This document shows positions 19,449-41,219 of a stretch of DNA of 64,000 nucleotides, one piece after another. The translations under genes and the position numbers were made by a program. A model generated the notes under the pieces. It was given only the letters and a program-made list of their open reading frames with translations. It did no database searches and had not been told where the DNA came from. Source of the stretch: Camelus dromedarius (lineage: Eukaryota); contig NC_087444.1 of NCBI RefSeq assembly GCF_036321535.1, positions 75,082,001-75,146,000 on the forward strand, read 5' to 3'. Numbering within the stretch: the stretch's first letter is position 1; the number at the start of each line of letters is the position of its first letter.

Positions 19449-20315
19449 CTAGTCGTGGCGCACGGGCACTGGCGGGTCCCCTCCGCTGGCCTGGTCAGAG
19501 TATGGGGGAGGCGGGGGCTGCTCCTCCTCCAGCCCGTAGGCGGCATGGCTGCGGCTGCGCTTGGCCTCTTTGATGTACAGCTCCAGGAGGACCTTGGTGG
19601 GCTGCTTGTCCACCCGCTCCCTGGGCACGCCGTGGCTCAGCAGCCAGCCCATGAGGTCCTTGCGCGTTGGGTTGGGCCCCAGCATGAGCTTGGTGCGGCC
19701 AGGTTGGCTCTGGCGCCAGAGCAGGCCAACATCGGCTATGGTCTGGATCTCCATCACCGCCTCCAGCACCGTCATGCCCTTGACCAGAAGGCTGACCAGC
19801 GAGAGCCGCAGCTCGGAGGGAGCGGCCGTCAGCAGGCGCCGCTGCAGGCCCTGCGTGAAGGGCACGTCCTCGGGCGCCGGGCGCTCAGGCTCGTTGGGCA
19901 GGGGCGGCTCTCGGTAGATCCAGTCCAGCATGCCCAGCTCGCGCACCAGCTGGATGCCCTCCTCCATGGTGGTCCAGGGCCGGAAAGGCAGCTCAGTGGC
20001 CTCGAAGTGCAGGAAGGACTCCCAGCGCTGGCGCCAGGCCTGCAGCAGCCAGGCCAGCAGCGTTCGGCAGCCACCCCGCAGGGCCTTGCAGTGGTAGTTG
20101 AAGACGGCATCACTGGTCAGGTCGCCCAGCAGCGCCAGCTCCCCGGAATTCAGGGACAGCGCTGGGCCCCCTTGGTCATACACCCGCAGGATCCAGGTGA
20201 TCATGAGCTCATTGGGGTTCTGCCTGAAGCGCCGCGCGATGGCCAGGAGCTCAGTGTACGTGTAGTAGCGGTCGCCCCGCCCCACCTGGGTGGGCGCCAG
20301 GGCTCTCTCGGCCAT
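19449..20315 (-). CDS. C19orf48: Intact 288-aa ERV-L Gag (capsid)-derived, Fv1-related ORF in the last exon of the C19orf48/SNORD88 host gene
   Basis: acagccATGG at 20315, 17 nt after acceptor cttcctgtcccccag (exon starts 20332); TAG at 19449-19451. ERV-L Gag-type motifs in order: YTYTEL, WILRVYDQGG, LTSDAVFN, LLAWLLQAWRQRW, PWTTMEEGIQLVRELGMLDWI, PEDVPFT, WLLSHGVPRERVDKQPTKVLLELY. The internal MTVLEAV matches the recalled start of the human C19orf48 ORF. Confidence 0.85.
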   Translation of the reverse strand: MAERALAPTQVGRGDRYYTYTELLAIARRFRQNPNELMITWILRVYDQGGPALSLNSGELALLGDLTSDAVFNYHCKALRGGCRTLLAWLLQAWRQRWESFLHFEATELPFRPWTTMEEGIQLVRELGMLDWIYREPPLPNEPERPAPEDVPFTQGLQRRLLTAAPSELRLSLVSLLVKGMTVLEAVMEIQTIADVGLLWRQSQPGRTKLMLGPNPTRKDLMGWLLSHGVPRERVDKQPTKVLLELYIKEAKRSRSHAAYGLEEEQPPPPPYSDQASGGDPPVPVRHD

Positions 20316-27160: not shown

Positions 27161-28060
27161 ACTACCATTATCTCCATTTTACAGTTGGGGAAACTGAGGT
27201 CCAAATGGGTTCAACCCCTTGCTCCCAGGTCATAGAGTGAGTCAGTGGCTGCACTAGATTCAAAACCTGCCTCCTTAACCATTGTGTGAAAGGGAGATAA
27301 ATGGGACCCCCCCCAGGCGGGGGCCCTGCAGGGAGACCTAGACATTGATATAACTGTGTACTTGAGTTTCAACCCTGCCCCGTTTAGTAAATGACTCGTA
27401 GCCCCAGACCATCTGCAAAGATTGGCTACCTATGACAGCCTTAAAAATAAATAAATAAGGAAGGAATGGGACCCCATAGAAAAAAAAATTTTAAGTGAAA
27501 AAAAGAACAGCTTTGTTTTGGGGTGGAGTTGGGGAGAAGAATGGAGACAGTGACAGGAGCTGTTGGGAAAGGCAGGAGGAAGTGTGGGTGCAAAGAGAAT
27601 TAACCTTGGGAGGGGCAAATTATTGGAGGTCACAGATGGGAAGGATGAAGCCCAAAGAGCTTGGCTTAAAAGCATCAGCTATTTGACAAACACTGACTGA
27701 GCACCATCTCTATGGCAGGAATCAGGAACCTGCTCTGTGTGCTGGTGCCTCCTGTCTCTTTCCCCTTGAGTCCCTCCCACACCTGCCCCTCTCCCCAGAG
27801 GGCCCAAGGGATGGCCCCAGGGAGGCCTGCCACTTCCCAAGTACACTTCGAGGTATTGAGCTCAAAGAACATTCTGGGTGAAAAACACAGATTCTTTGAA
27901 AATACAGATTATTAATCTGAGTTGGGAGAGGAATATTCAGAGGCGACTGGAAAGGGAAGAGACTCTCAGTGTGGGTAAGGCTGGAGAGCAGGGTTGTCAG
28001 GTACTTGGTGGGGAGCTGTGAGCAGGCTCCTTGGCAGGGAGGTAGGGTCATTCCTGTGCC

Positions 28061-31000
28061 CTAAGTCCAGATGGCCTGGATCGCCAGGAGGGACCAGAAG
28101 TTCATGTAGTTCAGATAGGAAAAGAAACCTGAAGGAAGGAAGAGTGCAGCGGGCTGAGGTGCAAGGTTCACCAGCCCGAGCCTGATCCTGGTTCTTTCCC
28201 CAAGCCCAGCCATACCCCTTACTGTGATCCCAAATCCATGCCCATACCCAAACTCCGCCCCATCCCCAACACTGTCCCTGACCCCTATCTTCAAACCCAA
28301 ACCCAGGACCATTCTCTACATTGCGCCCAACCCATTCCCCAGTCCAAACCCAACCCCACCCGTGCATCCAGCCCTATACCCATCCCCAACCCCATCTCCC
28401 TCCTCAGTCCAATCCTACTTAACCCTCTCTGCAATCCCATCCCCCTCCCAAACCCTGTCCCACCTAGTCCCCATCTGCCTCCCTGAACCCATGCCCAAAC
28501 CCCAAACCCAACCCCAGCCCGGCCCAGACCAGTCATCAGGAAGAGGAAGACGCCGATCCATGCCAGGTAGAAACTGCACCCCAGCTCGTAGGTCATGCCT
28601 TCCTGCAGGTACTCATGGGCCTGCATCAAGTAGAACAGGATACACAGTATCATGCTGATCCCTGCGTGAGTACAGGTGTTAGGAGGCCAGCATCAGGTGT
28701 GTGAGAACCCTTGCCCATAACTGTGTGGCTGCCAAGGTCTTGTTCATTATTTTCCCACTTCCTTTCACCTCCCTGAACGTCTGCTCACAGGCTGGAAAAC
28801 AGGCTCCTGACAACGTCTTGGTGGAGGACATTGGAAGGGCAAGACTTGGTCTTGAACCAGGCACTGGTGGTGTCTAAAACCACAGGCTTTGGGGCTGACA
28901 GACTGGACTTCTTGTCCTGCTTCTGTGTCCCATCTTAGGGCAGCCACTCCATCCCTCTGAGCCTCATTTCCCTCATCTGTAAAGTGGGCATAATCATAGG
29001 ACCCATCTCCTTGGGCTGTCATTAGGAGTTATTGAGATCAGCATGTTTCCTGGCACACAATGTGCCCTCAGGAATTGGGCTTGATTATCATCACTGTATT
29101 GGATCTTTAATTTTGGGCTTCTGAAGGAACTTAGTCATTCTGGACATTGGAACTTTATTTTGAAATGACATGAATTAAAGATAATTTGTGAAAAGGAAAA
29201 GATTCATTTTTTTCCTCAGGTAGTGGAATACTGGGTAATTTTTTTCTTTATGTTATTGAAAAATAATATAGGAGGTGTTTTGCATTTAATTGAAAGGGAC
29301 ATTGGACAGAAATGATTTTCTTATTGAAAAATGTTCTGTTTTAGATGACATAAAACAGATGTTTTCTACCCTTTGTACCTTGTATTTAAACAATCAGGAG
29401 GAGTTGCTAGACAAACTGGGTAAATACCATTTAATAACAAGGAAGTGGACTGTTCTCTATTCTTGGCCTCACTATTACTCTCTAAGAATGTTCTCTTGAT
29501 GCAATTGAAAGTTGTGATCAATTATTACAAGAGACAGGAACACAATATTCTTCATTTCCAAATTAAGTGCCCCTCTCTTCTAAAAAGTGTGGTTTGGCAT
29601 GCAAATGGAAACTAAACTATTCTAATCAGAATAGCAATTATGAGTTATTTGGGTGGGGGTGGGAGGATTATCACAATAAAGATGCAGGCACAGTTAAATT
29701 GCTACCATCACTTACTGACATTTTCTAATGCAATCCTCACTACATCTCCACATGGTAGGAAATGTTATCCCATCCTACAGATAAGAAAACTGTGGCTCAG
29801 AAAAATTAAGTAGCTTGAACAAAATCACTGAGCTGCTGGTGTTGGTGAGACGGGATGGGGTGGGAACTGGACACAGGGTTGAGTATTGGATAGTTGAAGA
29901 CTGAGTGATGGACACTGAGGTTGAGGCTGGTTTGAGGGGTGGGGATGAGTTGTGGTTGGGGATGAGTATGGATTGGAGACTGGTAAGACCATGAGGTTGG
30001 GAATGGGTTGGGTTGAGATTCACAGGTAAGAGGGGTAGTTTGGATTTGGAATGAGTCTTGAGGAGGGTTAGGCATGGAGTTGAGTTGTGTTGATGTTTGT
30101 AAAGGGCTTGGCGATTGGAAAGAAGATAGAATTGGAGTGGGGGTATGGATGGGGATGGATATCACAGAAGGGAATGTGAGTGATTTTGAGATCTGTTGGT
30201 GATGGAGTGGACTTGGACTGGAGATGGGGTTGGGTTGGAAGTTAATATTTTTTATTGGGGTGGACTGGAGATTTGGAGGGAGATAGTACTGGGATTGGGG
30301 TTGAAGGTGAAAATGAGGATGGCGCTGGAGTGTGGTGGGGAGAGGTTGGCTATCAGGAGAGGCACTGGGCAGGGAACTCCTCTACTTGGTTCCTCAGGGA
30401 CAGGTCTCAGTGCCATGCCTGTCAGGATGCTGATGATGACACTGGAGAAGTCCAGCATGGGCGTGTTGGTGCTTGTGAAGAAGACGATGTTTATGAGGAT
30501 GATGCAGAGGCAGAAGCTGGAAGTGCTTGCAATGAGGAGGAAGGCCCAGGCAAAGTCCAGTAAGTCTGGGGAAGGAAGAAAATCAGGACACCAAGACGGG
30601 CCCTGAGGCCCTGAGCATGGGGGAGAGGGTCCCCGGGGAGTCTGGAAGTAGTCTTAAGTCCTCTCCCTTGAAAATTCTTCATCCCTATTTTAAGGAAATT
30701 GAAATTGGGCTCTAGAGATGGGGTATTGAGGCAGATGCCTCTAGGTCATTGAGGACAGGTTCTTGGGCAGTGACAAGTGGGTTGGGCATTGAGGAACTAA
30801 CTTGATGTGATGAGGACAGATTCCTTGGGGTGAAAAAGCCTCAGGATTATGTACCAGGTGCTAGGGTCATGAGAATTGTGAGGATGGGTATCATGTAGGT
30901 GAGAATGAGCATAGGCAGTGAGAACTGTCTTGGGGGAAAGGGGGACTATTCAAGGGTAGTGGGAACTGTCATGGAGAGGGGAGAACTAGCCCAGGGCAGT

Positions 31001-32835
31001 GAGGACCAATCCGGGGAAGGCAGAAGAGGGTCCCTGGGACAAAGAGGAGAGATGAGTCCCAGGAACAGTGAGTGTAGGGTAGGTCTTACAAGCATTCTGG
31101 TCGTACTCATTCTGGCAGGAGGTGTCAGGGCACTGCACAAAGAAGATGGTATTGATGAGGATGGTGGGGTAGCCAGCAGCATCCCCAGGGGGCATCAGTG
31201 GCACCTGGAAGTGGATCCAGTGCTGGCCCAGAGAGATGAGACCGATGGTCACCATGCCGGCCAGGCTCAGCACCAGGCTCAGCTGGTGACTGATCTTCTT
31301 GGCCTCATGCAGCAGCCGCCAGCCCATGGGCAGCTGGGAATGGCTGAGTCTACACCTGTCCCGAAACCTGCAGCAGATTGCCCATTACCAGTGTCAGCAC
31401 TGAGTCCAGCCACCCAGCCCAGCCACCCCAGGTCCAGCTATCAGACCCTGTCCCCCCAAGTCTAACCTTCAGACTCTATTTTGCCCATGTCTGTTCTCCA
31501 TGCCCTGTATCTCCCTCTAGGACATGCTCACCTGGGTTCAGCCTCTAGGCTCCCTTGCCTCCAGATCTAGCTTCCAGGCCTTGCCACCCCCAAATCTATT
31601 CTCTAGGTTGAATCACAGGTCCAGCCTCTATGCCAGTCCCCACCCAGAGCAAGCCTTCAGATCCAGCTTTCAACCCCAGCCACACCTAACTCTAAACTCC
31701 AATCTCTGCTATACCGACTATGCCTCTGGTCCCTGGCTTTTCCTGATACCCCTCCCCCAGAATTCTAGCCCCAAAGCTGACCAGCTCTCTGGACGCCTGC
31801 CTCTTACCTGCCAGATCTGCCCTCAGTGGAGCTGCCTGATGGTGAACTGTAGAGGTAGCTTTCTGGGGTATTTGGGTTGTGTTGGGGACCATCCAAAGTG
31901 TCTTTGAAGCTCTCCTGGGAGGTCCAGATGATTGATTCATTACTTTTGATACTGGCCTCTGGGCTGTGAGTAATTGATGGGGGGACATCGACTCTGGCCC
32001 GGACTGACCTGGAGACTTGAAGGCTTGAGTGGGGACTCTGGGTTGTTGGCGGGATACTCACTTGACTACTGCAGGTAACTGATTTTACATTGGCCCGGGG
32101 GGTGCGAGTCACTGACAAAGGGCTTTGGATACTGAAGCGGTGAGTATGGAAAACAGATGGGACATCTCGGGTTTTGAAATGGCTACTGTAGATTACAGAC
32201 GGTGTGTCTTGGACACTGGCCCGGTGACTGCTGGTGATGGGTGGCACGTCCTCAGCACTGACTTGGTGACTGATGGATGATGCATCTTGGATACTGACCC
32301 GGTGGCTGTGGACAACTGGCAGGGGTTCTTGGATACTGACCTGGCGGCTGTGGACAACTGGCAGGGGTTCTTGGATACTGACCCGGCGGCTGTGGACAAC
32401 TGGCAGGGGTTCTTGGATACTGACCCGGCGGCTGTGGACAACTGGCAGGGGTTCTTGAATACTGACCCGGCGGCTGTGGACAGTGGGTTGAGAGTCTTTA
32501 ATACTGACTTGGTGACTCTGGACAGTGAGCTGAGAGTCTTGGGTACTGGCGTGGTGACTCTGGACAATGGGCTGAGAGTCTTGGGTACTGACCCGGCGGC
32601 TGTGGATAACAGGCAGGGGTTCTTGGATACTGACCCGGCGACTGTGGACAGTGGGCTGAGAGTCTTCAGTACTGACTTGGTGACTCTGGACAGTGGGCTG
32701 AGAGTCTTGGGTACTGACTCGGGGCCTGAAGGTAGTTGATGACGAGTCTTGGGTCTTGCCTTGGTTGTTGTTAGTTGCTGCTGGAAGGAATTCTGGCAGA
32801 GCACTCTGGTGGCCAGATTGGGACCTCTGGGCCAT
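28061..32835 (-). CDS. Unnamed 550-aa claudin/PMP22-superfamily tetraspan protein with a long repetitive Ser/Arg-rich N-terminus (gene A)
   Basis: Exons 31808-32835, 31090-31367, 30419-30565, 28530-28661 and 28061-28128 total 1653 nt (551 codons), open throughout. Four hydrophobic segments, W...C-x4-C first loop, SFYLAWIGVFLF TM4. The donor after exon 3 is GC (AG|GCATGG at 30418); all other sites are GT-AG. Confidence 0.8.
32289..32750 (-). repeat. Coding minisatellite, 11 x 42 bp (14-aa repeat such as HSRRVSIQEPLPVV)
   Basis: Units start at 32289+42n on + (ggatactgacccggcggctgtggacaactggcaggggttctt and a ...ggacagtgggctgagagtctt subtype); there are no spacers. Confidence 0.95.
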
Positions 32836-34248
32836 GTGGACATGCGAGGTCTGGCCAATCCCCAGATGTACTCAACAGCCTGCCAACTGCCTCAGCCCTT
32901 CCTTCCAGGCATCTCCATGGCCACTTGGAAGTCCATTGGTCTCTCCCGGGGCTCAGGCTGTGTCCTTTGGGGTTTGAATCTCTCTGTCCCCTCTTCTGTG
33001 TTTCTTGGTCTCTCCTGCTGTCCACAGTCAGGCCTCAGGGCTTCAATCTGACCTGGAGCTGGGGGCAGGGGGAGGTTCCATGACAGTTGGAGGGGTTCCA
33101 GGAGGTAGAGACATTAGCCATGGACTCACATTCCACCCTAGACCTGTGTGAGAGACATGGGGGCTTGGGCTGGGTCAGGGTGGGCTCAGTGTAGGGTCTT
33201 GGTAGGGTCAAGATTGGGTTACGAAGGGGTCACTGCTGGGTCAGAGAGGTGTCAGGACAGGGCAAGGGTGGGATAGAGGGTAGGGAATGATCAGGGTGGA
33301 GACAGAGCAGGATCAGAGAGGGGCCAGGGTAGGTGGGGTCAGAGTAGGGTTAAGGGGTAAGGGAGGGGTCAAGGTGAAGACAACAGGGGCCAGAGTAGGG
33401 CTAGGCGAGGCTGAGTCAGGGCTGGGTCACGGGCCATCTCTAAGATCAATTCTTGCAGTTTCTGGAGAGCCTGTGATCTGAATTTATCATTCACTCCTCC
33501 TACCTGTCTCCCCCTCATCCCAGCCAGGGCCTTCTCTGAATCAAGTTCATCCCCTTATTCCCGTCTCAATTTCCATGTGTATTCTTGTTCCTTTTCCGTC
33601 TCCTCTGTCTCTGCCTCTCTTCAACTGTCCCTGAGTCTCAGGGACTCAGAGAAGATTAGGCCTGCTCCCTACCCTCAAAGACCTCCAGTCTGGGTTTGGG
33701 GAGAGGAAGCAGACCCAGCCACAGATCGAGAAAGGCTCCGGAGAGGTCAGCAGAAGTGCAGGCGTCCTGACCAGTATATGCTGCCTTTCCAGTCAGAGGG
33801 GGGATTTTTCCAAACTGCTGTTTTCCTCATCCTCTCCTTTGCCTTTAATGATGATATTTTGAAAAAAACAAAACCCACAAACTTTTATGTCTTTAATTAC
33901 ATGGATATCTATTTAACTGTTCTGTACCTCTGTTTCCTCATCTGTGAGAGGAGATTATGATACTTCAGAGGGTTGTTGTAAGGATGAAATGGGCTGATAA
34001 AAGCACTTAGAACCCATTGTAAGAAAAACTTGTTGAAAGTTTTTACATTTCATGGATGTTGATTTCAGTTCTAAAACTTTTTCTCCATCCCCTAAGCTCC
34101 TTCCTGAGTTCCAGACTCAGAGACCCAATTTCTTCTGAAATCCACATTGAGAGGTACCACAGAAGAAGAGAAAGGAATTACTATTCCTGGATACCGCTAA
34201 TGCATCCATTCATTCATTTATTCATGCACGCTTTCAAGAGCAAAGGCT

Positions 34249-34621: not shown

Positions 34622-37600
34622 ATGTTGGAAGTGAGGGTGTTTAGGGCAGTCTGGGCAAAGGTGGAAGAAGAAAGCCCTAGGTGGAGGGAGCAGCAGGAAT
34701 CCGAGCTTCAACTCAGGGAGGAGAGGCCCCAAGGTGGCCTCTTGGTGTGTGAGAGGGACCCTGTGAAGTCCAGTGTGGCTCTGGAGGTAAGCGAGCAGTG
34801 TGGGGTCAGGGTCCCTGCCAACTGGGAAGGTTGGCAGATCACAGTGCTTGGTGGGTGTTGGGTGCACCACCCATGTTCGCTCCTTTGACGCCATGGGTCT
34901 TGGCCTGGTGAACACACTTTGGAACCTTTGTCATTGTTTTCTGTGTCCTAGGTTGGAATTTGTGACAGGGATGGTGGTAAGGGGAATGAAGCTGAGAGTG
35001 GAGACAGAGCTGGGCTTTGAGGACTAGGAAGGAGAGCATGAGGCTGGAGACAGAACAAGTAGATTTGGGCTCAGGGTGGGATGTGGATGGGGGCTGAGTT
35101 GTGTGTTAGGAGTAGAAATAGAAATGGGTAGTGTTTGGGATTTAGGAAGCATACTGGGGATGGCATGGGGTTGTGGATGGTCCTGGGGATGGGACAGAAA
35201 ACAGAGAGGGGAATGAAGTTGGAATGGGGGTTTGGGTGGGGATGGGAAAGATGGCTATGGGTGGAAGGGAATTGAGAATAGGGTAAAAGGCAAGGTTTGG
35301 GTGGAGGCAGAGATATGACTGTGTTCCGTGATGGAGATTAGGATGAAACAGAGTGATGCAGGCAGATCCAGGCCCCCAGAACTCTATTCTTTCCCAGTGG
35401 ACCCCGTCTCTTCCTGGGAGGAGGACCGCAAGTTCGTCCTGCGGGGCTGGTGTCTCGTCTTCAGCATCCTGGCGACCCTGATGGTGCTCAGTGTGTTGGA
35501 TGGGCGTATGGCCTACTTGCAGGGCTCCTACACGGGCTACCTGGGCTTCTGGACTGACTGCAGGAAGCACAAGTGTGTCAGCCTGGGCCAAGTCACCGGT
35601 CAGTAGGAGCCTGGACAGGCTATAGGGTGCTCTGGGGGGAGGTGTCTCCGGAGATTATCAAGGGAGAGAATCTCTGGGGGAATCTCTTTGGGTGTTCCTG
35701 GGAGGGGGGAGTCTTCAGTATTCCTGAGAGGGTCTCTGGAGATTCTCTGGAGGCCTTGTGAGGGTTTTCCTGGAATTACATATGACTTAGAGAAATCGGG
35801 ACTGTCACTGTGCATGGAAAGAAGGGCATTACACGTGGCCTGAAGATTAGATGGTTAAAGGCACCATCATTCTCTCTCACACACTTTTTAAAAGTTTTTT
35901 TTTTTTTTTTTAAAGATAACAGGAGGCTTCCGGCTCCTTGAGAAACATTTTGCCTCCTTGTAGATGTCTGTGTTTCCAGGGCTTTTGAGCATTGCCACAG
36001 AGGCAGCCCAGACCCTGGAGCCAGAGAGCCTGGGTTCAAATCCTGGCTCAGCCACTTGGTAGCTGGGTTATCTTGGGCAGATTCCTTCACTCCTGTGTGC
36101 CACAAGTTTCCTCATTTTTATAATGTCAGTGATAGCAGTACCTAATCATGTTTGAGGAAGACGTGAGTTAAAACACAGAAAGGAATTAGAACAGTGCCTG
36201 GCCCGTGTTCTTATTATAAGAATTCTTTTTCTCCAGCCAACGCACCTACCTTCATTTTGGATCTCAAGTGCTCCTTAAGACTTCCTGAACATTGTGTAAG
36301 ATTAATCTTATTTGTTTATTTTGAGAATCTCTTTCTCTTATACCTCTCAAACTCAAGCTGGTTTCAAGTTATAGAAAAATTGGGAGCCATACATTGATCC
36401 TGGTTCAGGTACTGCTGGATCTGGTGCTCAAAAGGTGTCTGTCTCTTGCCATCTCTCCTTGAAGCCTTCCTCTGTGGTGGGCCCTTAGGCAAACTGTGCC
36501 CATGCAGTGGCAATGTGGTTGTCCAGCAGCTTCCGGGTCCCATTTTTTTCTGTAAACAACCATGGAAAAAAGAGAGTAAGCTGTCTCCTCTGGCCCTCAA
36601 GCACAGGTCTCAGGATTAAGTCAGAGGGGGTCAGATTCACTGCCTGGGAATTTCTCACTGCTCCGTGAACCGTTTGCTGTGGTCAGGAGGATGTCATGCT
36701 GTGATTGGCTGGGTCTGGATCAGGTGCTTTTCTTAAGAGTCAATGGAAGGGGTCATTTCTGTCAGAAGCACAAGGACAGAGGGTGAGTGGAGAGTTCCTC
36801 CGAACAGTATCAAGACGCTGTTGCCAAAAGAGTGGGAATGGATGCTGGGTGGGCAAACGCAACTGTGCACAATGTCCCCGTATGTCTACAATACTTTATT
36901 TGAGCACAATTACTTTGGGAGGTAGACTCCCAAGCGCAGAATAGCAGTGCTTCAGAAGGGTTGGTGACATTTTGTAAGGCTTTGTTAGATACTCCATCTA
37001 CAGAATCCAGGAGTCTCATGACCAGCAACAGAAGCCAATTCAGCTTGGTTTAAGCAGAAAATAGATTTATATTTTCAGGATTAAGACCATGCCCAAAGAG
37101 TCCTGGAGGACTGGCTGGCTGGGCATGCACATTGCAGCTTGACCTGTGGATCCCAGTATCTCCAGGCCTGGACTCCACTGGGGAACCTCTTTCTCTGCTA
37201 CACCGGGAGCCTGGAGGTAGTTGCAGCCAACCTCACTAGAACTGAGTTCCCACCTACTTCTGGCTGCTGATTCCAAGTTTAGCGTGGCTCTATTTTATTG
37301 GTGGAGCCTCATCGCATGCTGAGGTCCTAGCTGTAAGACAGGCTGGTTTCCTTACTGGGAAGTGCAGATACATAGGTTGGGAAATTCCAACAGGACTGGT
37401 ATTCAGAGGTGCTGGGAAGACAAAAAAGAATGGTGTATATTCATTATATGCCTCATTTGTTCTAAAATGTTAACTGTGTGTGATTTTTAAACTTTTTCTT
37501 ATTTAAATTTCGTTTTTTTATTGAAGTAGAGTCAGTTTACAATGTTGTGTCAGTTTTGGGTGTACAGCATAATGCTTCAGTCATGCATGTGCATACATAC

Positions 37601-40530
37601 ATTCCTTTTCAAACTCTTTTACATGATAGGGTACTGTAAGATATTGAATATTGTTCCCTGTGCTGCGCAGTAGAAACTTGTTGTTTATCTGTCCTATATA
37701 TAGTAGTTGGTATTTGCAATTTTTCCTTATTTTAAATTTAAATGGCTTTTATTTTATTTGAACAGGTAGTATATGTATGTGGTTCAACATTTAAAAAAGT
37801 GCTAACTTCTCTCATTTTTGGGCTGAATCTCTCCCAGATCCCCGCCCTGGGGGGCAACCAATGTTGCTAAACCGTTTTTAAGCTCTTGCGTGTTCTAGTC
37901 ATATTCTCTGCACATATGAGAAAATCGCTATATGTGTATATACACATATGACTATACATACATATATACACTTAGAGGTATGTGTATACATATATTTATC
38001 ATTTAAAAACACACATGTCAGTATTATAGTTCTCTTTTAAAGGTGAGTCACCATTTATTGAATGCTAAGAATATACAGAGCGTTATGGTTGGCATAAAGA
38101 ACTAACATGTTAGGTTATGAAGGTTTTAATTATTTTTTGAGGTGCAGAAATTTAGAATTTTTATGTAGTCTAAATTCTCCACCTTTGTCTCTGTGACTTT
38201 ACTAACTTAGCTTTGGGAAGCACTTCTCCCTCTAGATTTTTGGTGAACATTCAATTCTGGTTTTATATATATATGTGTGTGTGTGTTTTAGGGCCTGACT
38301 GTGATTTTGGTGGGTGGTAGGCAGGCAGTATTGAATCCTGTGCTCCTTGCCAACCTACAGAAGAGACCTGAATTACTCAGAAGTCTCTGAGTCACAAGTG
38401 ATAGAAACTCTAAATTAAACTAGCTTGAGTGAAGGAATTTATGGGCTCACCCAGTGAAAAAGGTGGGGACAGAAATGCTTTCAGGCATGGCTGCATTCAG
38501 GGTCCAGGTGATTTCATCAGACATTACTGTCTGTTTCTTGGCTACTTAACTGGGGCTCAGAGTGGCTAAAGGCAGGAAGGCAAAATGCACGGTGGGGAGG
38601 TAAGCAGCAAATGGCCACTCCTTCTGACCAAACTACAAGAGTGGGCTTATCTCTGGGATGGCAAGAGCCAGGGACTTGAATGTCATCTGAACTCTCTTTC
38701 TCTTGTCTGCTTTCTCTTCTTAGTTTTATCTTTCAGGTCTCCTGTCACCCATGAGGCTGGGTCCAAGGCTCAGGCAGCTCCAAGTTCATAATCTTCTTGG
38801 CTAAAGGAGAAGGAGCTGGTCCCTGACAACTTCAGTTAGAAAAAAGTCCCAGAGAAGAGCTTGATTGGTTGGTTTTGACCATGTGCCCATCTTTGAGCCC
38901 ATCACCCTGGTCTGGGTCATGGGGCACTGTGATGGGCTCATCCACAGTCACACGATGACCTCTGTGGCCCCAGATGGCAGGATATGTCATGAAAAGCCCT
39001 CAACCAGGATTATGTGATGGATCCCAAGAGCACTATTGCTATTCTGTATATATGTGCAGTTTGCCAAAAACAAAGCAGATGAAGTCTTAGCCCACTTCAC
39101 TGAAGTAGTTTTGCACTGTTCAACAGTAGGCAAAACAGGAAAGGGCTAAACGGAGGAGATTTAATTCTCAGAAGGGGCTGAATCTCATACTGAAATGCAA
39201 ATTGGATAAATATCAATTTCAAACTGAGTGTGATTACATCTTTTAGGTACCTTGGTTTTAGAGTATTTGGAAGTTTTCTTGTTGTGTACTTCTTGTGTGT
39301 GCTCCGGAGGACAAGGGGACATTTGGAGAATGTCTGCGGGAGGGTTGAGGGTGTGAATGGGGATGACATTTGGATATTTGGGGAGCTTCTGGGGGGTGTG
39401 AATGAGGTCACTAGGGAACCTTGGGTTATGAGTGGAAGAGAAATAGGGTGACTTCAGAGATGACTAAAGTCACTAAGGTGTCTTGGGTAACTTTGAGGGT
39501 GCTATGAGGAGTGTCTAGGAGTGGTATTGAGGGCATTGATGTGAGTTGCTGTGGGACATCTTTTGGGAGTATGAGTAGGGTAACTTTGTGTGTGTGTGTG
39601 TGTGTATAATTCTAGAAATAATAGAGATGATTCTGTGTGGTGAACTTGAGGATGTGAGGGGGGTGCCTCAGGTCATCTGTGTGGTATGTGTGGATTTGAT
39701 TATGAGAGTGTCTAGGGTTGACTTTGGGACAAGTGGGGTGATTTGGAATGACTTTGAGGGTGCAAATGGGGAAGGCTTTTTAAAACTGAGGTATAGTTAA
39801 TTTACAATATTATATAAATTTCACAACATAGTGAGTCACAATTTTTAAACAAAGTGGGGATGACTGGGTTGACTTTACGGGTACATGAGGGTGACTTCGT
39901 GAGTGAGAGTGGGCATCATTTGGGGTTTTCTAGGAGGTGACTTTGGCAACAGCAATGGGGTGATTTTGAGGATGTCTGTAGCTAAACATTGGGGGTAACT
40001 GTTGGGGATACTGCTCATGGGTGTCAGTGGGGATGAGGGTGACCTTGGAGAGTATCTGGGGATGACTCTGGGGCATTCCCCCCTTTCCCCCCAGTTCTCA
40101 TCCACATGAGCATGGGCTTCATGATGCTGGCCCTGGTCCTGTGTCTAGTCCTCCTCCCCACCATGAGCCTCTCCTTCCGGCCAGTGTTCCGCCGCCTTAA
40201 CAAGGCTGACCTTGTCTTCAGTTCCCTCAGCTTAAGCATTGGTAAATGTCACCCTGGAGGAGGGGGTACCCTCCCTATCCCAGCATCTCTCCCCTGAGGC
40301 TCTCTGGCTTTGGGGAAGATGCTTCTCAGAGTTTCTGTCCTGATGTCTGCTGGGTCTCGGTCTTTGAATGTCTGTTGGGATCTCTGTCCCACTCTCTGTG
40401 CGCATCTCACTTTATTTTACTCAGGTGGGGTGAGTGTGTTGGGTATCTCTCTCAGTCTCTTCCTGTTTCCTTCTCTTTCCGCCGCCTCTTGGTATCTTTC
40501 TGTCTGGTGAGTGTGTGTGTGTGTGTGTGT

Positions 40531-40593
<63 letters not shown>

Positions 40594-41219
40594 AATGTGT
40601 GCCCAAAAGAGCGCACTTGTCCTGAAGGATGGGAGAGGATCTCTTCTCTTTCTGGCAGTCTCAGGGTCCCTGTCCAGCCTCGTGTCCATCTCTGGCCCCA
40701 CCCAAGTGCAGGGTTCCTGATTGTCCTCAGCCTGACGCTCTTTGTAGTCAACTGCGAGACGCTGCAACCGAGGCCACAGGTATCCTACCTGATGACCACC
40801 TACCTGTGCTGGAGCGGCGGCGCCTTGATGCTGTGGGCCGGTGAGGGCGGGGCCTCGGGAGGAAGGGGTGGGGTCTCGGCAGGGCAGGGGGCGGAGCCCG
40901 GGGAGAACTCCAGGCGGCTGAGGGCCAGATGGGGCAGACCTGGGGGGAGATCCACCTCAGGGATGGGGCAGAGCCTAGGGCGGAACTCGGAGTCCAACGG
41001 CCCACCTAGTCCCCACCCCCAGGAGCACTGAGCTACTTGAACCACGTGGGCATGTGGGGCAGAGGGATGACCTCTATGGAGCGGCGGTTGAGCTATCGCC
41101 GGTGGGTCTCGCAGCAGAGCACCCAGAGGTCCACGCTCGAACAGCCGCGGTCAGACCAAGACTCCAAGTGCACCGAGGACGTGCCCCAGTTCACTTCCCT
41201 CCCCAAGACCCTCCCCTAA
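34622..41219 (+). CDS. Unnamed 287-aa claudin/PMP22-superfamily tetraspan protein (gene B; TMEM202/CLDND2/LIM2-like architecture)
   Basis: Exons 34622-34786, 34952-34976, 35398-35598, 40095-40241, 40712-40840 and 41023-41219 total 864 nt (288 codons), all GT-AG and in frame. GFWTDCRKHKC loop motif and four TM segments. The first two exons are less certain; an in-frame ATG at 35331 is an alternative start. Confidence 0.8.
36640..38980. mobile_element. Cluster of old MLT1 (J/K-like) LTR and L1 fragments in the long intron of gene B
   Basis: tgattggctgggtctggatcaggtgc, gaagccaattcagcttggtttaagc and tgattggttggttttgaccatgtgcccatc motifs; AT-rich L1-like stretch at 37500-38250. Boundaries are approximate. 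Confidence 0.5.
40510..40590. repeat. Interrupted (TG)n microsatellite
   Basis: About 40 TG units with one GA interruption. Confidence 0.97.

What the first reader, a model, noticed from the sequence alone, without database searches (positions are those of the whole stretch)
28061..32835. Unnamed claudin-superfamily gene with a roughly 360-aa disordered N-terminus
Seen: five exons join in frame (phase-2 junction ..GGC AG|G TTT CGG..) to give 550 aa, a long Ser/His/Arg-rich region fused to a four-TM domain with a C-x4-C loop. Established: claudin/PMP22-family proteins normally have very short N-termini. I recognise no named human protein-coding gene in this interval. Inference: an uncharacterised gene, possibly lost in human; relatives such as TMEM202/TMEM225 are testis-biased.
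Basis: partly seen in the sequence, partly recalled or inferred. Interest (0 to 1): 0.75.

Follow-up and report, generated by a model that had tools for sequence, protein, structure and literature searches.

The report
Uncharacterised ODF4/TMEM202-like tetraspan gene in camel
This is a real but unstudied mammalian gene, the camel counterpart of mouse Gm36864: a four-pass membrane protein related to the sperm proteins ODF4 and TMEM202, with a long floppy tail that repeats a kinase-target motif conserved across placental mammals.

Summary
On the minus strand, five exons (32835-31808, 31367-31090, 30565-30419, 28661-28530, 28128-28061) join in frame to give 550 aa. About 355 aa are Ser/Val/Gln/Pro/Arg/His-rich and predicted disordered; a four-helix domain with an invariant C-x4-C loop follows.

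It is the orthologue of mouse LOC102640913/Gm36864, which has RefSeq NP_ records including a 447-aa long form. The same fused architecture is annotated in all four placental superorders. The window matches Camelus ferus.

The membrane domain has the claudin/TARP fold. Its nearest named relatives are TMEM202 (hhalign 97.8%) and ODF4 (96.8%). It is not a classical claudin.

The first exon is coding:
- Its start, a VDVPPSITHSP block and the residues across the exon 1/2 junction are conserved.
- The Met in exon 2 is not conserved.
- Indels are in frame.

New here: every orthologue carries 2-13 copies of RRVSIQ(E/D)P-type motifs, which match the PKA consensus.

Not shown:
- Splicing in camel.
- Tissue of expression.
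- Loss in human. No anthropoid protein appeared in three searches, but no genome was examined.

No paper mentions the gene.

The parts
31808..32835 (-). Exon 1 coding part: ATG at 32835 and 342 codons plus 2 nt, the disordered N-terminal region. Donor is CAG|gtaaga.
   Evidence: Orthologous ORFs in 88 proteins, including 24 independent ORFs from ENA/Logan genomic contigs; at least 17 of them stop aligning exactly at aa 343. The start (MSQRPQS..QSTQP..LPAAP) and the VDVPPSITHSPEASIKS block are conserved. pLDDT is 42.8.
32285..32722 (-). In-frame 42-bp (14-aa) tandem array of about 10 units, of type HSRRVSIQEPLPVV. It carries the RRVSIQEP motifs.
   Evidence: TRF finds period 42, 10.4 copies, 84% matches. 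The units are listed in register. The motif is conserved in all 22 sequences examined, against about 0.03 expected from shuffles.
31090..31367 (-). Exon 2: juxtamembrane segment (FRDRCRLSHSQLPMGWRLLHEAKK), TM1 and extracellular loop 1 with C-x4-C.
   Evidence: E 1e-39.
30419..30565 (-). Exon 3: TM2 and the start of TM3. It has a GC-AG intron donor (ACAG|gcatgg).
   Evidence: E 6e-19. The cat has the same GC donor. The Camelus ferus model P0216 reads through this donor and gains 11 aa that are absent from all orthologues.
28530..28661 (-). Exon 4: TM3, loop 2 (LQEGMTYxLG, invariant) and TM4.
   Evidence: E 2e-24. Weak PF00822 match, E 0.0016.
28061..28128 (-). Exon 5: the end of TM4 and the C-terminal tail (SYLNYMNFWSLLAIQAIWT), then TAG.
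   Evidence: E 4e-12. Orthologues end at the same residue.
32836..33335 (-). Conserved, CpG-poor upstream region, a candidate 5'UTR and promoter.
   Evidence: It aligns with two felids over 500 bp with long identical runs and holds 3 CpG in 500 bp. The transcription start was not determined.

Best explanation
This is the camel orthologue of mouse Gm36864/LOC102640913. It is a genuine protein-coding gene found across placental mammals, and nobody has characterised it. Its C-terminal 195 aa form a four-helix membrane domain of the PMP22/claudin/TARP fold, in the divergent branch that also holds the sperm proteins ODF4 and TMEM202. Translation starts in exon 1. As a result, about 355 aa of intrinsically disordered chain precede TM1; by analogy with the fold family this chain should be cytoplasmic (inferred). 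That chain is not featureless. It has a conserved start, a conserved VDVPPSITHSPEASIKS block, and a variable number of copies of RRVSIQ(E/D)P. This motif fits the PKA / basophilic-kinase consensus R-R-x-S-hydrophobic. The most likely role (inferred, not shown) is a male germ-cell or sperm membrane protein whose tail acts as a multi-site, phosphorylation-regulated docking platform. The repeat number drifts by whole 42-bp units. Identity and architecture are shown or strongly supported. Tissue, topology, phosphorylation and function are inferences. I put about 0.8 on identity and architecture and about 0.4 on the germ-cell/kinase-substrate role.
For: Gene model: in frame, with canonical sites plus one conserved GC donor. 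Orthologues: 88 hits to exon 1 and 67 to the membrane domain, sharing the fused architecture. They span Laurasiatheria, Euarchontoglires, Xenarthra (tamandua) and Afrotheria (dugong). Mouse: RefSeq NP_001365586.1 (447 aa, long form), NP_001365587.1 and NP_001365588.1. The window's membrane domain is identical to Camelus ferus EPY88811.1 apart from an 11-aa read-through. Alpaca isoform X1 is 83% identical overall, with 42 gap positions.
Exon 1 is coding and joined to exon 2. The Met of PMGWRLL is I/L/V/T/K in most species, so exon 2 has no conserved start. The motif (S/G)R|FQ(D/N)K is conserved across the junction, and the start MSQRPQS... is conserved from camel to tamandua. Between two felids, exon 1 differs by indels of 42 and 3 bp only, while their introns carry out-of-frame indels.
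Fold: AF2 pLDDT 81.7, pTM 0.74. Foldseek top hits are ODF4, TMEM202, TARP gamma-5/7, NKG7, TMEM225B, claudin-11 and CLDND2, and in PDB TARPs and claudin-15.
Homology: a profile search of 1.84 billion proteins gives only 70 hits. Beyond orthologues these are TMEM202 (E 3e-7 to 8e-5) and echidna ODF4 (2e-4). hhalign gives 97.8% to TMEM202, which shares C-x4-C, and 96.8% to ODF4, which shares PxxxRLLxEA and YLNxxxFWSIL.
Motif: the pattern R[VLIAF]S[ITVLA]Q (core RRVSIQ(E/D)P) occurs 2-13 times in each of the 22 sequences, against about 0.03 in shuffles.
Relatives' biology: Odf4 is reported as essential for male fertility and flagellar shape in mice (PMC9941515; title and abstract listed). Tmem202 is testis-enriched, and knockout males are fertile (PMC6735960). 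TMEM202 is a phosphoprotein of boar sperm (PMC8322956).
Against: The RNA-labelled runs that hold the locus hold an intron-only stretch as well as or better than the whole locus (0.55-0.87 against 0.34-0.81). They therefore look like DNA or unspliced RNA and say nothing about splicing or tissue. Short forms exist: mouse isoform 3 uses another first exon (232 aa), and the sperm whale and C. ferus models start at the internal Met. Exon 1 diverges between felids about as fast as the introns (2.1% against 1.6-5%), with no third-position bias (8/3/7), so most of the tail is weakly constrained. Pfam PF00822 sits at or just under its gathering score (26.8, 26.4, 26.2, 25.9 against 26.7). No paper mentions the gene, so the function is pure inference.
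Confidence: 0.8

Rival explanations
1. In camel the functional product is only the short tetraspan of about 194 aa. It would start at Met357 or come from an alternative first exon. Exon 1 would then be a 5'UTR, or would be used only in a minor isoform.
For: Camel, cats, mustelids and deer have a Met at PMGWRLL. The C. ferus and sperm whale annotations start there. Mouse RefSeq isoform 3 (NP_001365588.1, 232 aa) joins a different 28-aa first exon to the same exon 2 acceptor. No junction reads were obtained here.
Against: The Met is absent in most species, including mouse, rat, dog, lemur, colugo and rabbit. In those species a start in exon 2 would fall inside TM1. The exon 1 frame, start, motifs and junction residues are conserved over roughly 100 My. 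Mouse RefSeq isoform 1 is the long form. A short isoform alongside the long one remains quite possible.
Confidence: 0.12
2. The exon 1 ORF is a by-product of a stop-poor minisatellite and does not code for protein.
For: Other frames of the same stretch are also open for 150-221 codons. The nucleotide divergence of exon 1 between felids is close to that of the introns.
Against: The same frame is open in more than 60 species. The motifs are conserved only in that frame. Indels are multiples of 3 (42 and 3 bp). Non-repeat blocks such as VDVPPSITHSP are nearly invariant.
Confidence: 0.03
3. It is a classical tight-junction claudin.
For: Four helices and the claudin fold, with claudin-11, -15 and -10 among the structural matches.
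Against: The loop-1 spacing is C-x4-C, not the claudin C-x(8-10)-C, and there is no GLW. The C-terminus ends in ...AIWT, not -YV. There is no sequence hit to any PDB chain. Pfam is borderline. The nearest relatives are ODF4 and TMEM202.
Confidence: 0.02
4. The camel copy is a decaying pseudogene.
For: Neither protein search listed a full-length camel model, and nothing was flagged as the window's own protein. The only camel entry seen is a truncated 2013-era model.
Against: All five exons are open, the splice sites are intact, the invariant residues are kept, and the sequence is about 90% identical to alpaca outside the repeat-number difference.
Confidence: 0.03

Closest known systems
TMEM202 (testis-enriched tetraspan; Pfam clan of PMP22/claudin)
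   Same: Homologous over 171 columns (hhalign 97.8%, E 1e-12). Shares the C-x4-C pair in loop 1, W-x-x-F after TM1, and the G..S.LNY end of TM4. Has the same fold (TM-score by query 0.71-0.76). TMEM202 is testis-enriched and a sperm phosphoprotein.
   Different: Only about 20-25% identical. TMEM202 has about 60 aa before TM1 and a C-terminal tail. This protein has about 355 aa before TM1 with RRVSIQEP arrays and almost no C-terminal tail. TMEM202 exists in marsupials; this gene was found only in placentals.
ODF4 (outer dense fibre protein 4 / OPPO1)
   Same: Best structural match (E 3e-7, TM-score by query 0.76). hhalign to echidna ODF4 gives 96.8%, with 28% identity over 185 columns and shared juxtamembrane PxxxRLLxEA(K/R) and terminal YLNxxxFWSIL. 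NCBI names several orthologues 'ODF4-like'.
   Different: It is a separate locus, next to the C19orf48/SNORD88 host gene and ACP4 in the KLK region. ODF4 lacks the long repeat-bearing N-terminus. ODF4's role in flagellar shape and its link to AK1/AK2 (PMC9941515) cannot simply be transferred.
Classical claudins and TARPs (CACNG)
   Same: Four-helix bundle with a beta-sheet made from loop 1 and loop 2. Foldseek gives probability 1.0 to TARP gamma-2/5/7/8 and claudin-15 (4p79).
   Different: There is no sequence-level match to any solved chain. The claudin signature and the PDZ-binding end are absent. The long extension is N-terminal, whereas TARPs extend at the C-terminus.
TMEM225 / TMEM225B
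   Same: Same fold (TM-score by query 0.69-0.71). Weak PF25452 hits (E 0.01-0.2).
   Different: Not recovered by the profile search. More distant than TMEM202 and ODF4.

Membership tests
Orthologue group of mouse Gm36864 / LOC102640913 | High identity over the whole membrane domain, ending at the same residue | tested here: met
   57-81% identity over 195 aa to about 40 full-length proteins. 66% to mouse.
Orthologue group of mouse Gm36864 / LOC102640913 | Same exon structure and intron phases | tested here: met
   The cat locus L001 has five exons, the same phases, and the same GC donor at intron 3.
Orthologue group of mouse Gm36864 / LOC102640913 | Conserved synteny | tested here: met
   In cat the order is upstream head-to-head gene, this gene, a gene with a DUF5535 domain, then a His_Phos_2 gene (ACP4-like). 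The window has a head-to-head neighbour at 34622-41219 and the Fv1-like ORF at 19449-20315. Mouse synteny was not examined.
Orthologue group of mouse Gm36864 / LOC102640913 | Long N-terminus with RRVSIQ(E/D)P motifs and a VDVPPSIT block | tested here: met
ODF4/TMEM202 branch of the claudin superfamily | Significant profile-profile homology | tested here: met
   hhalign gives 97.8% (E 1e-12) to TMEM202 and 96.8% (E 2.5e-10) to ODF4. hmmsearch E 3e-7 to 2e-4 in a library of 1.84 billion proteins.
ODF4/TMEM202 branch of the claudin superfamily | Expression in testis or sperm | tested here: inconclusive
PMP22/EMP/MP20/Claudin (Pfam PF00822) | Score at or above the Pfam gathering threshold of 26.7 bits | tested here: inconclusive
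   Dog 26.8, alpaca X1 26.4, mouse 26.2 and 25.9, others 17-22. ODF4 (25.3) and TMEM202 (14.7) are also below it. The spliced camel protein itself could not be submitted. Only its exon 4 piece matched, at 18.9 bits.
PMP22/EMP/MP20/Claudin (Pfam PF00822) | Four-helix fold with a loop 1/loop 2 beta-sheet | tested here: met
   AF2 model of the cat orthologue (81% identical): helices 2-33, 81-109, 115-147, 158-194 and strands 39-44, 56-61, 153-156. Foldseek matches to TARPs and claudin-15.
Classical claudins | Loop-1 signature W...GLW..C-x(8-10)-C | tested here: not met
   The loop has W38 and C67-x4-C72 only.
Classical claudins | Short N-terminus (a few residues) and a C-terminal PDZ-binding -YV | tested here: not met
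   About 370 aa precede TM1, and the C-terminus is ...AIQAIWT.
PKA / basophilic kinase substrates | Consensus R-R-x-S/T-hydrophobic | tested here: met
   Five RRVS(I/T) sites in camel and up to 13 in other species.
PKA / basophilic kinase substrates | Actual phosphorylation | not testable with these tools
   No phosphoproteomic data could be reached. A full-text search for RRVSIQ found nothing.
PP1-docking RVxF proteins | [RK]-x(0,1)-[VI]-{P}-[FW] | tested here: not met
   There are no matches in the 550 aa. The motif ends in Ile, not Phe or Trp.

The most novel reading that the evidence does not exclude
This is a placental-specific sperm or spermatid membrane protein. Its cytoplasmic tail is an evolutionarily tunable array of PKA phospho-switch motifs (RRVSIQEP, 2-13 copies). 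It would couple cAMP/PKA signalling, for instance during capacitation or flagellar maturation, to a claudin-fold membrane anchor. It was lost in anthropoid primates, including human.
Probability: 0.2. Interest if true: 0.65.

Novelty: new member of a known kind. Interest (0 to 1): 0.5.

Why it matters
ODF4 is required for male fertility in mice, and TMEM202 is a testis-enriched sperm phosphoprotein. A third, unstudied member of this small branch is a concrete candidate for sperm biology and for livestock and camelid fertility genetics. It is conserved in all placental superorders and carries a strictly conserved multi-copy kinase motif on a fast-evolving tail. If it is truly absent from anthropoid primates, it would be another reproductive gene lost on the human lineage. 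It also shows a practical gap in annotation: camel annotations appear to hold only a truncated, mis-spliced model.

Tried and rejected
No junction, strand or depth data were obtained. After that call, no letters of 28954-29022 were sent to any database, collection, paper or findings search. The later run search used 29030-30410. A local script read the whole window file for a six-frame HMM scan on the closed machine.
2. The look-up of sequencing runs. RNA-labelled 'reproductive system' runs hold 0.53-0.81 of the locus, but they also hold 0.62-0.87 of an intron-only stretch. Runs at 0.34-0.36 overall hold 0.55-0.61 of the intron. I rejected these as evidence for spliced expression or tissue.
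3. ENA/Logan proteins as possible spliced cDNA evidence. All are single-exon genomic ORFs that end at or just after a splice donor, so they give no junction evidence.
4. The look-up of encoding contigs failed for alpaca, mouse X4 and deer, which were not on record. The dog look-up was not sent. A camel-alpaca dN/dS could therefore not be computed.
5. Sequence search against PDB with the profile gave no hit.
6. Pfam on single camel exons gave only a weak exon 4 hit.
7. Literature. Gm36864 matched only one unrelated 1990 paper, and I did not inspect that single occurrence. LOC numbers, UniProt and RefSeq ids and the motif gave nothing. Two ids, an NM_ and an ENSMUSG number, were my own guesses and mean nothing.
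8. The RVxF/PP1-docking idea was rejected because the motif is not met.
9. The neighbouring gene as a close paralogue was rejected at sequence level. The A1 profile finds nothing there, and hhalign to its TM1/loop exon gives 1%.
10. Complex prediction was not used, because no partner is justified.
Full report
**What is in the sequence**

The gene lies on the minus strand. Joining 32835-31808, 31367-31090, 30565-30419, 28661-28530 and 28128-28061 gives 1653 nt, or 550 codons, ending in TAG. All acceptors are AG. Three donors are GT, and the exon 3 donor is GC (ACAG|gcatgg).

A hydropathy scan finds four membrane-length segments, at about aa 371-391, 440-462, 474-497 and 512-533. It finds none in the first 355 aa. 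The first loop contains CPDTSC.

The N-terminal region is S 20%, V 11%, Q 10%, P 10%, R 8%, T 7%, H 6%. It contains an in-frame 42-bp tandem array at 32285-32722, with about 10 units of type HSRRVSIQEPLPVV.

**Whose gene it is**

The exon 1 product finds 88 proteins. A mouse-lemur membrane-domain query finds 67. Almost all are 'uncharacterized protein LOC...' models or carry misleading automatic names such as mucin-2-like, extensin-like or serine-rich adhesin-like. Several are called 'outer dense fiber protein 4-like'.

About 40 of them show the same fused architecture, with the membrane domain 57-81% identical to the window's and ending at the same residue.

- The group covers Laurasiatheria, Euarchontoglires, Xenarthra (tamandua) and Afrotheria (dugong).
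- No marsupial or monotreme orthologue appeared. The best hits in those groups are TMEM202 and ODF4.
- The mouse member is LOC102640913/Gm36864. It has RefSeq NP_001365586.1 (447 aa, long form), NP_001365587.1 (403 aa) and NP_001365588.1 (232 aa, alternative first exon).

The window's membrane domain is letter-identical to Camelus ferus EPY88811.1, except for 11 residues that model gains by reading through the GC donor. The first 40 residues differ from alpaca at one position. The genome is therefore a camel.

Alpaca isoform X1 (508 aa) is 83% identical overall, with 42 gap positions, which equals three 14-residue repeat units. Neither protein search returned a full-length camel model.

**Is exon 1 really coding and joined to exon 2?**

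The RNA-labelled runs that hold the locus hold an intron-only stretch (29030-30410) just as well. They therefore say nothing about splicing or tissue.

The comparative evidence is strong:

- **No conserved start in exon 2.** The Met in PMGWRLL is I, L, V, T or K in most species, including mouse, rat, dog, lemur, colugo and rabbit. The next Met lies inside TM1.
- **Conserved start in exon 1.** M(S/A)Q(R/K)(P/S)QS..QSTQP.FLPAAP is conserved from camel to tamandua.
- **Conserved junction residues.** The residues encoded across the junction, (S/G)R|FQ(D/N)K, are conserved.
- **Independent open reading frames.** Twenty-four ORFs called on ENA/Logan genomic contigs are open in this frame. At least 17 of them stop aligning exactly at the exon 1 end.
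- **Same gene structure in cat.** The cat locus has the same five exons and phases, and the same GC donor.
- **In-frame indels.** Between two felids, exon 1 differs by indels of 42 and 3 bp only, while their introns carry out-of-frame indels.
- **A conserved non-repeat block.** VDVPPSITHSPEASIKS.ES is nearly invariant from mouse to camel.

The tail is otherwise weakly constrained. Felid exon 1 divergence is 2.1%, against 1.6-5% in introns and 0.4-1.5% in the membrane exons. Substitutions by codon position are 8/3/7. AlphaFold2 with a 20-species alignment gives mean pLDDT 42.8 and no secondary structure, which is consistent with intrinsic disorder.

**A conserved linear motif**

All 22 sequences examined carry 2-13 matches to R[VLIAF]S[ITVLA]Q. 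Nearly all have the form RRVSIQ(E/D)P(P/L)P. Composition-preserving shuffles give about 0.03.

This motif fits the PKA / basophilic-kinase consensus R-R-x-S-hydrophobic (established knowledge). It does not meet the RVxF PP1-docking pattern. Copy number changes by whole units: alpaca has about three units fewer than camel, and cheetah differs from Geoffroy's cat by one.

**Family**

- **Pfam.** PF00822 matches at E 6e-6 to 6e-3. That is at or just under the gathering score: 26.8 dog, 26.4 alpaca, 26.2 and 25.9 mouse, against 26.7. ODF4 (25.3) and TMEM202 (14.7) behave the same way.
- **Solved structures by sequence.** The orthologue profile finds no PDB chain.
- **Predicted fold.** The AF2 model of the cat membrane domain, which is 81% identical to the window's, has pLDDT 81.7 and pTM 0.74. 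It has four long helices and a small sheet from loops 1 and 2.
- **Structural neighbours.** Foldseek ranks ODF4 first (E 3e-7, TM-score 0.76). Next come TMEM202, TARP gamma-7 and gamma-5, NKG7, TMEM225B, claudin-11, CLDND2, TMEM225 and GSG1. In the PDB it finds TARPs and claudin-15.
- **Profile search.** An exhaustive search of 1.84 billion representatives returns only 70 proteins. Beyond orthologues and fragments these are TMEM202 and echidna ODF4.
- **Profile-profile comparison.** hhalign gives 97.8% (E 1e-12) to TMEM202, whose loop also has C-x4-C. It gives 96.8% (E 2.5e-10, 28% identity) to ODF4, which shares PxxxRLLxEA before TM1 and YLNxxxFWSIL at the end.

The gene is therefore a third member of the ODF4/TMEM202 branch. 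It is not a classical claudin: it has no GLW...C-x(8-10)-C signature and no -YV end.

**Function**

Nothing is published on this gene.

- Odf4 is reported as essential for male fertility through flagellar shape, and ODF4 associates with AK1 and AK2 (PMC9941515; title and abstract listed).
- Tmem202 is testis-enriched, and knockout males are fertile (PMC6735960).
- TMEM202 is phosphorylated in boar sperm (PMC8322956).

By analogy, I take this to be most likely a male germ-cell membrane protein. Supporting features are the CpG-poor but well-conserved upstream region and the fast-evolving tail. The N-terminal tail would be cytoplasmic and would serve as a multi-site, kinase-regulated docking surface. 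Topology, tissue and phosphorylation are all inferred.

**Primates**

The only primate hit in three searches is mouse lemur, even when the lemur protein is the query. This fits loss or non-annotation in anthropoids. No primate genome could be examined, so 'lost in human' remains untested.

**Verdict**

The gene is annotated but unnamed and unstudied. It is a new member of a known kind, with one notable feature: the conserved RRVSIQEP array. I rate its interest as moderate.

Noticed in passing
window 32843 (minus strand), ORF 32193-32858: An out-of-frame ATG lies 8 nt upstream of the start codon and opens an overlapping ORF of about 216 codons through the repeat array. The ATG is absent in two felids (CATCCCCACATG), so it is probably a by-product of the stop-poor repeat. 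It could still dampen translation of the main ORF in camel.
   Followed up: partly
window 32836-33335: The 500 bp upstream of the ATG align with two felids with long identical runs. They look better conserved than coding exon 1, and they are CpG-poor (3 CpG). This is a candidate tissue-specific promoter and 5'UTR shared by the head-to-head gene pair.
   Followed up: partly
window 35328-35606 (+), part of the neighbouring gene at 34622-41219: The neighbour's TM1/loop exon has its own C-x4-C (WTDCRKHKC). It shows no detectable homology to this gene's profile: hmmsearch finds nothing and hhalign gives 1%. The 'paralogous pair' idea is not supported at sequence level. A fold comparison was not done.
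   Followed up: partly
window 30380-30419; protein P0216 (Camelus ferus EPY88811.1): The only camel model seen starts at the internal Met and reads through the GC donor of intron 3. This inserts 11 residues (MALRPVPEEPR) that are absent from every orthologue. It is an annotation error caused by a conserved GC-AG intron.
   Followed up: yes
proteins P0172, P0173, P0100: Some database models fuse pieces of this gene with neighbours. A marmot model and a squirrel model named 'Friend virus susceptibility protein 1' carry DUF5535. A shrew model is named 'blarina toxin-like'. These are likely read-through gene predictions in the KLK region.
   Followed up: no
protein P0177 (Hipposideros larvatus, 216 aa): A bat model joins the first 13 conserved codons of exon 1 directly to exon 2 and skips the whole disordered region. 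This could be an internal donor in exon 1 (exitron-like) or a prediction artefact.
   Followed up: no
window 28000-32900 and 29030-30410; runs X1-X14: Runs filed as RNA-Seq or metatranscriptomic from 'reproductive system metagenome' samples hold host intron sequence at 0.6-0.87 of the sampled words. This suggests heavy host DNA or unspliced RNA content, so they should not be used as expression evidence on this genome without a control.
   Followed up: partly
window 26959 (minus strand): The only polyadenylation-type hexamer (ATTAAA) within 1.5 kb downstream of the stop is 1.1 kb away. There is no AATAAA. The 3' end of the gene is undefined.
   Followed up: no
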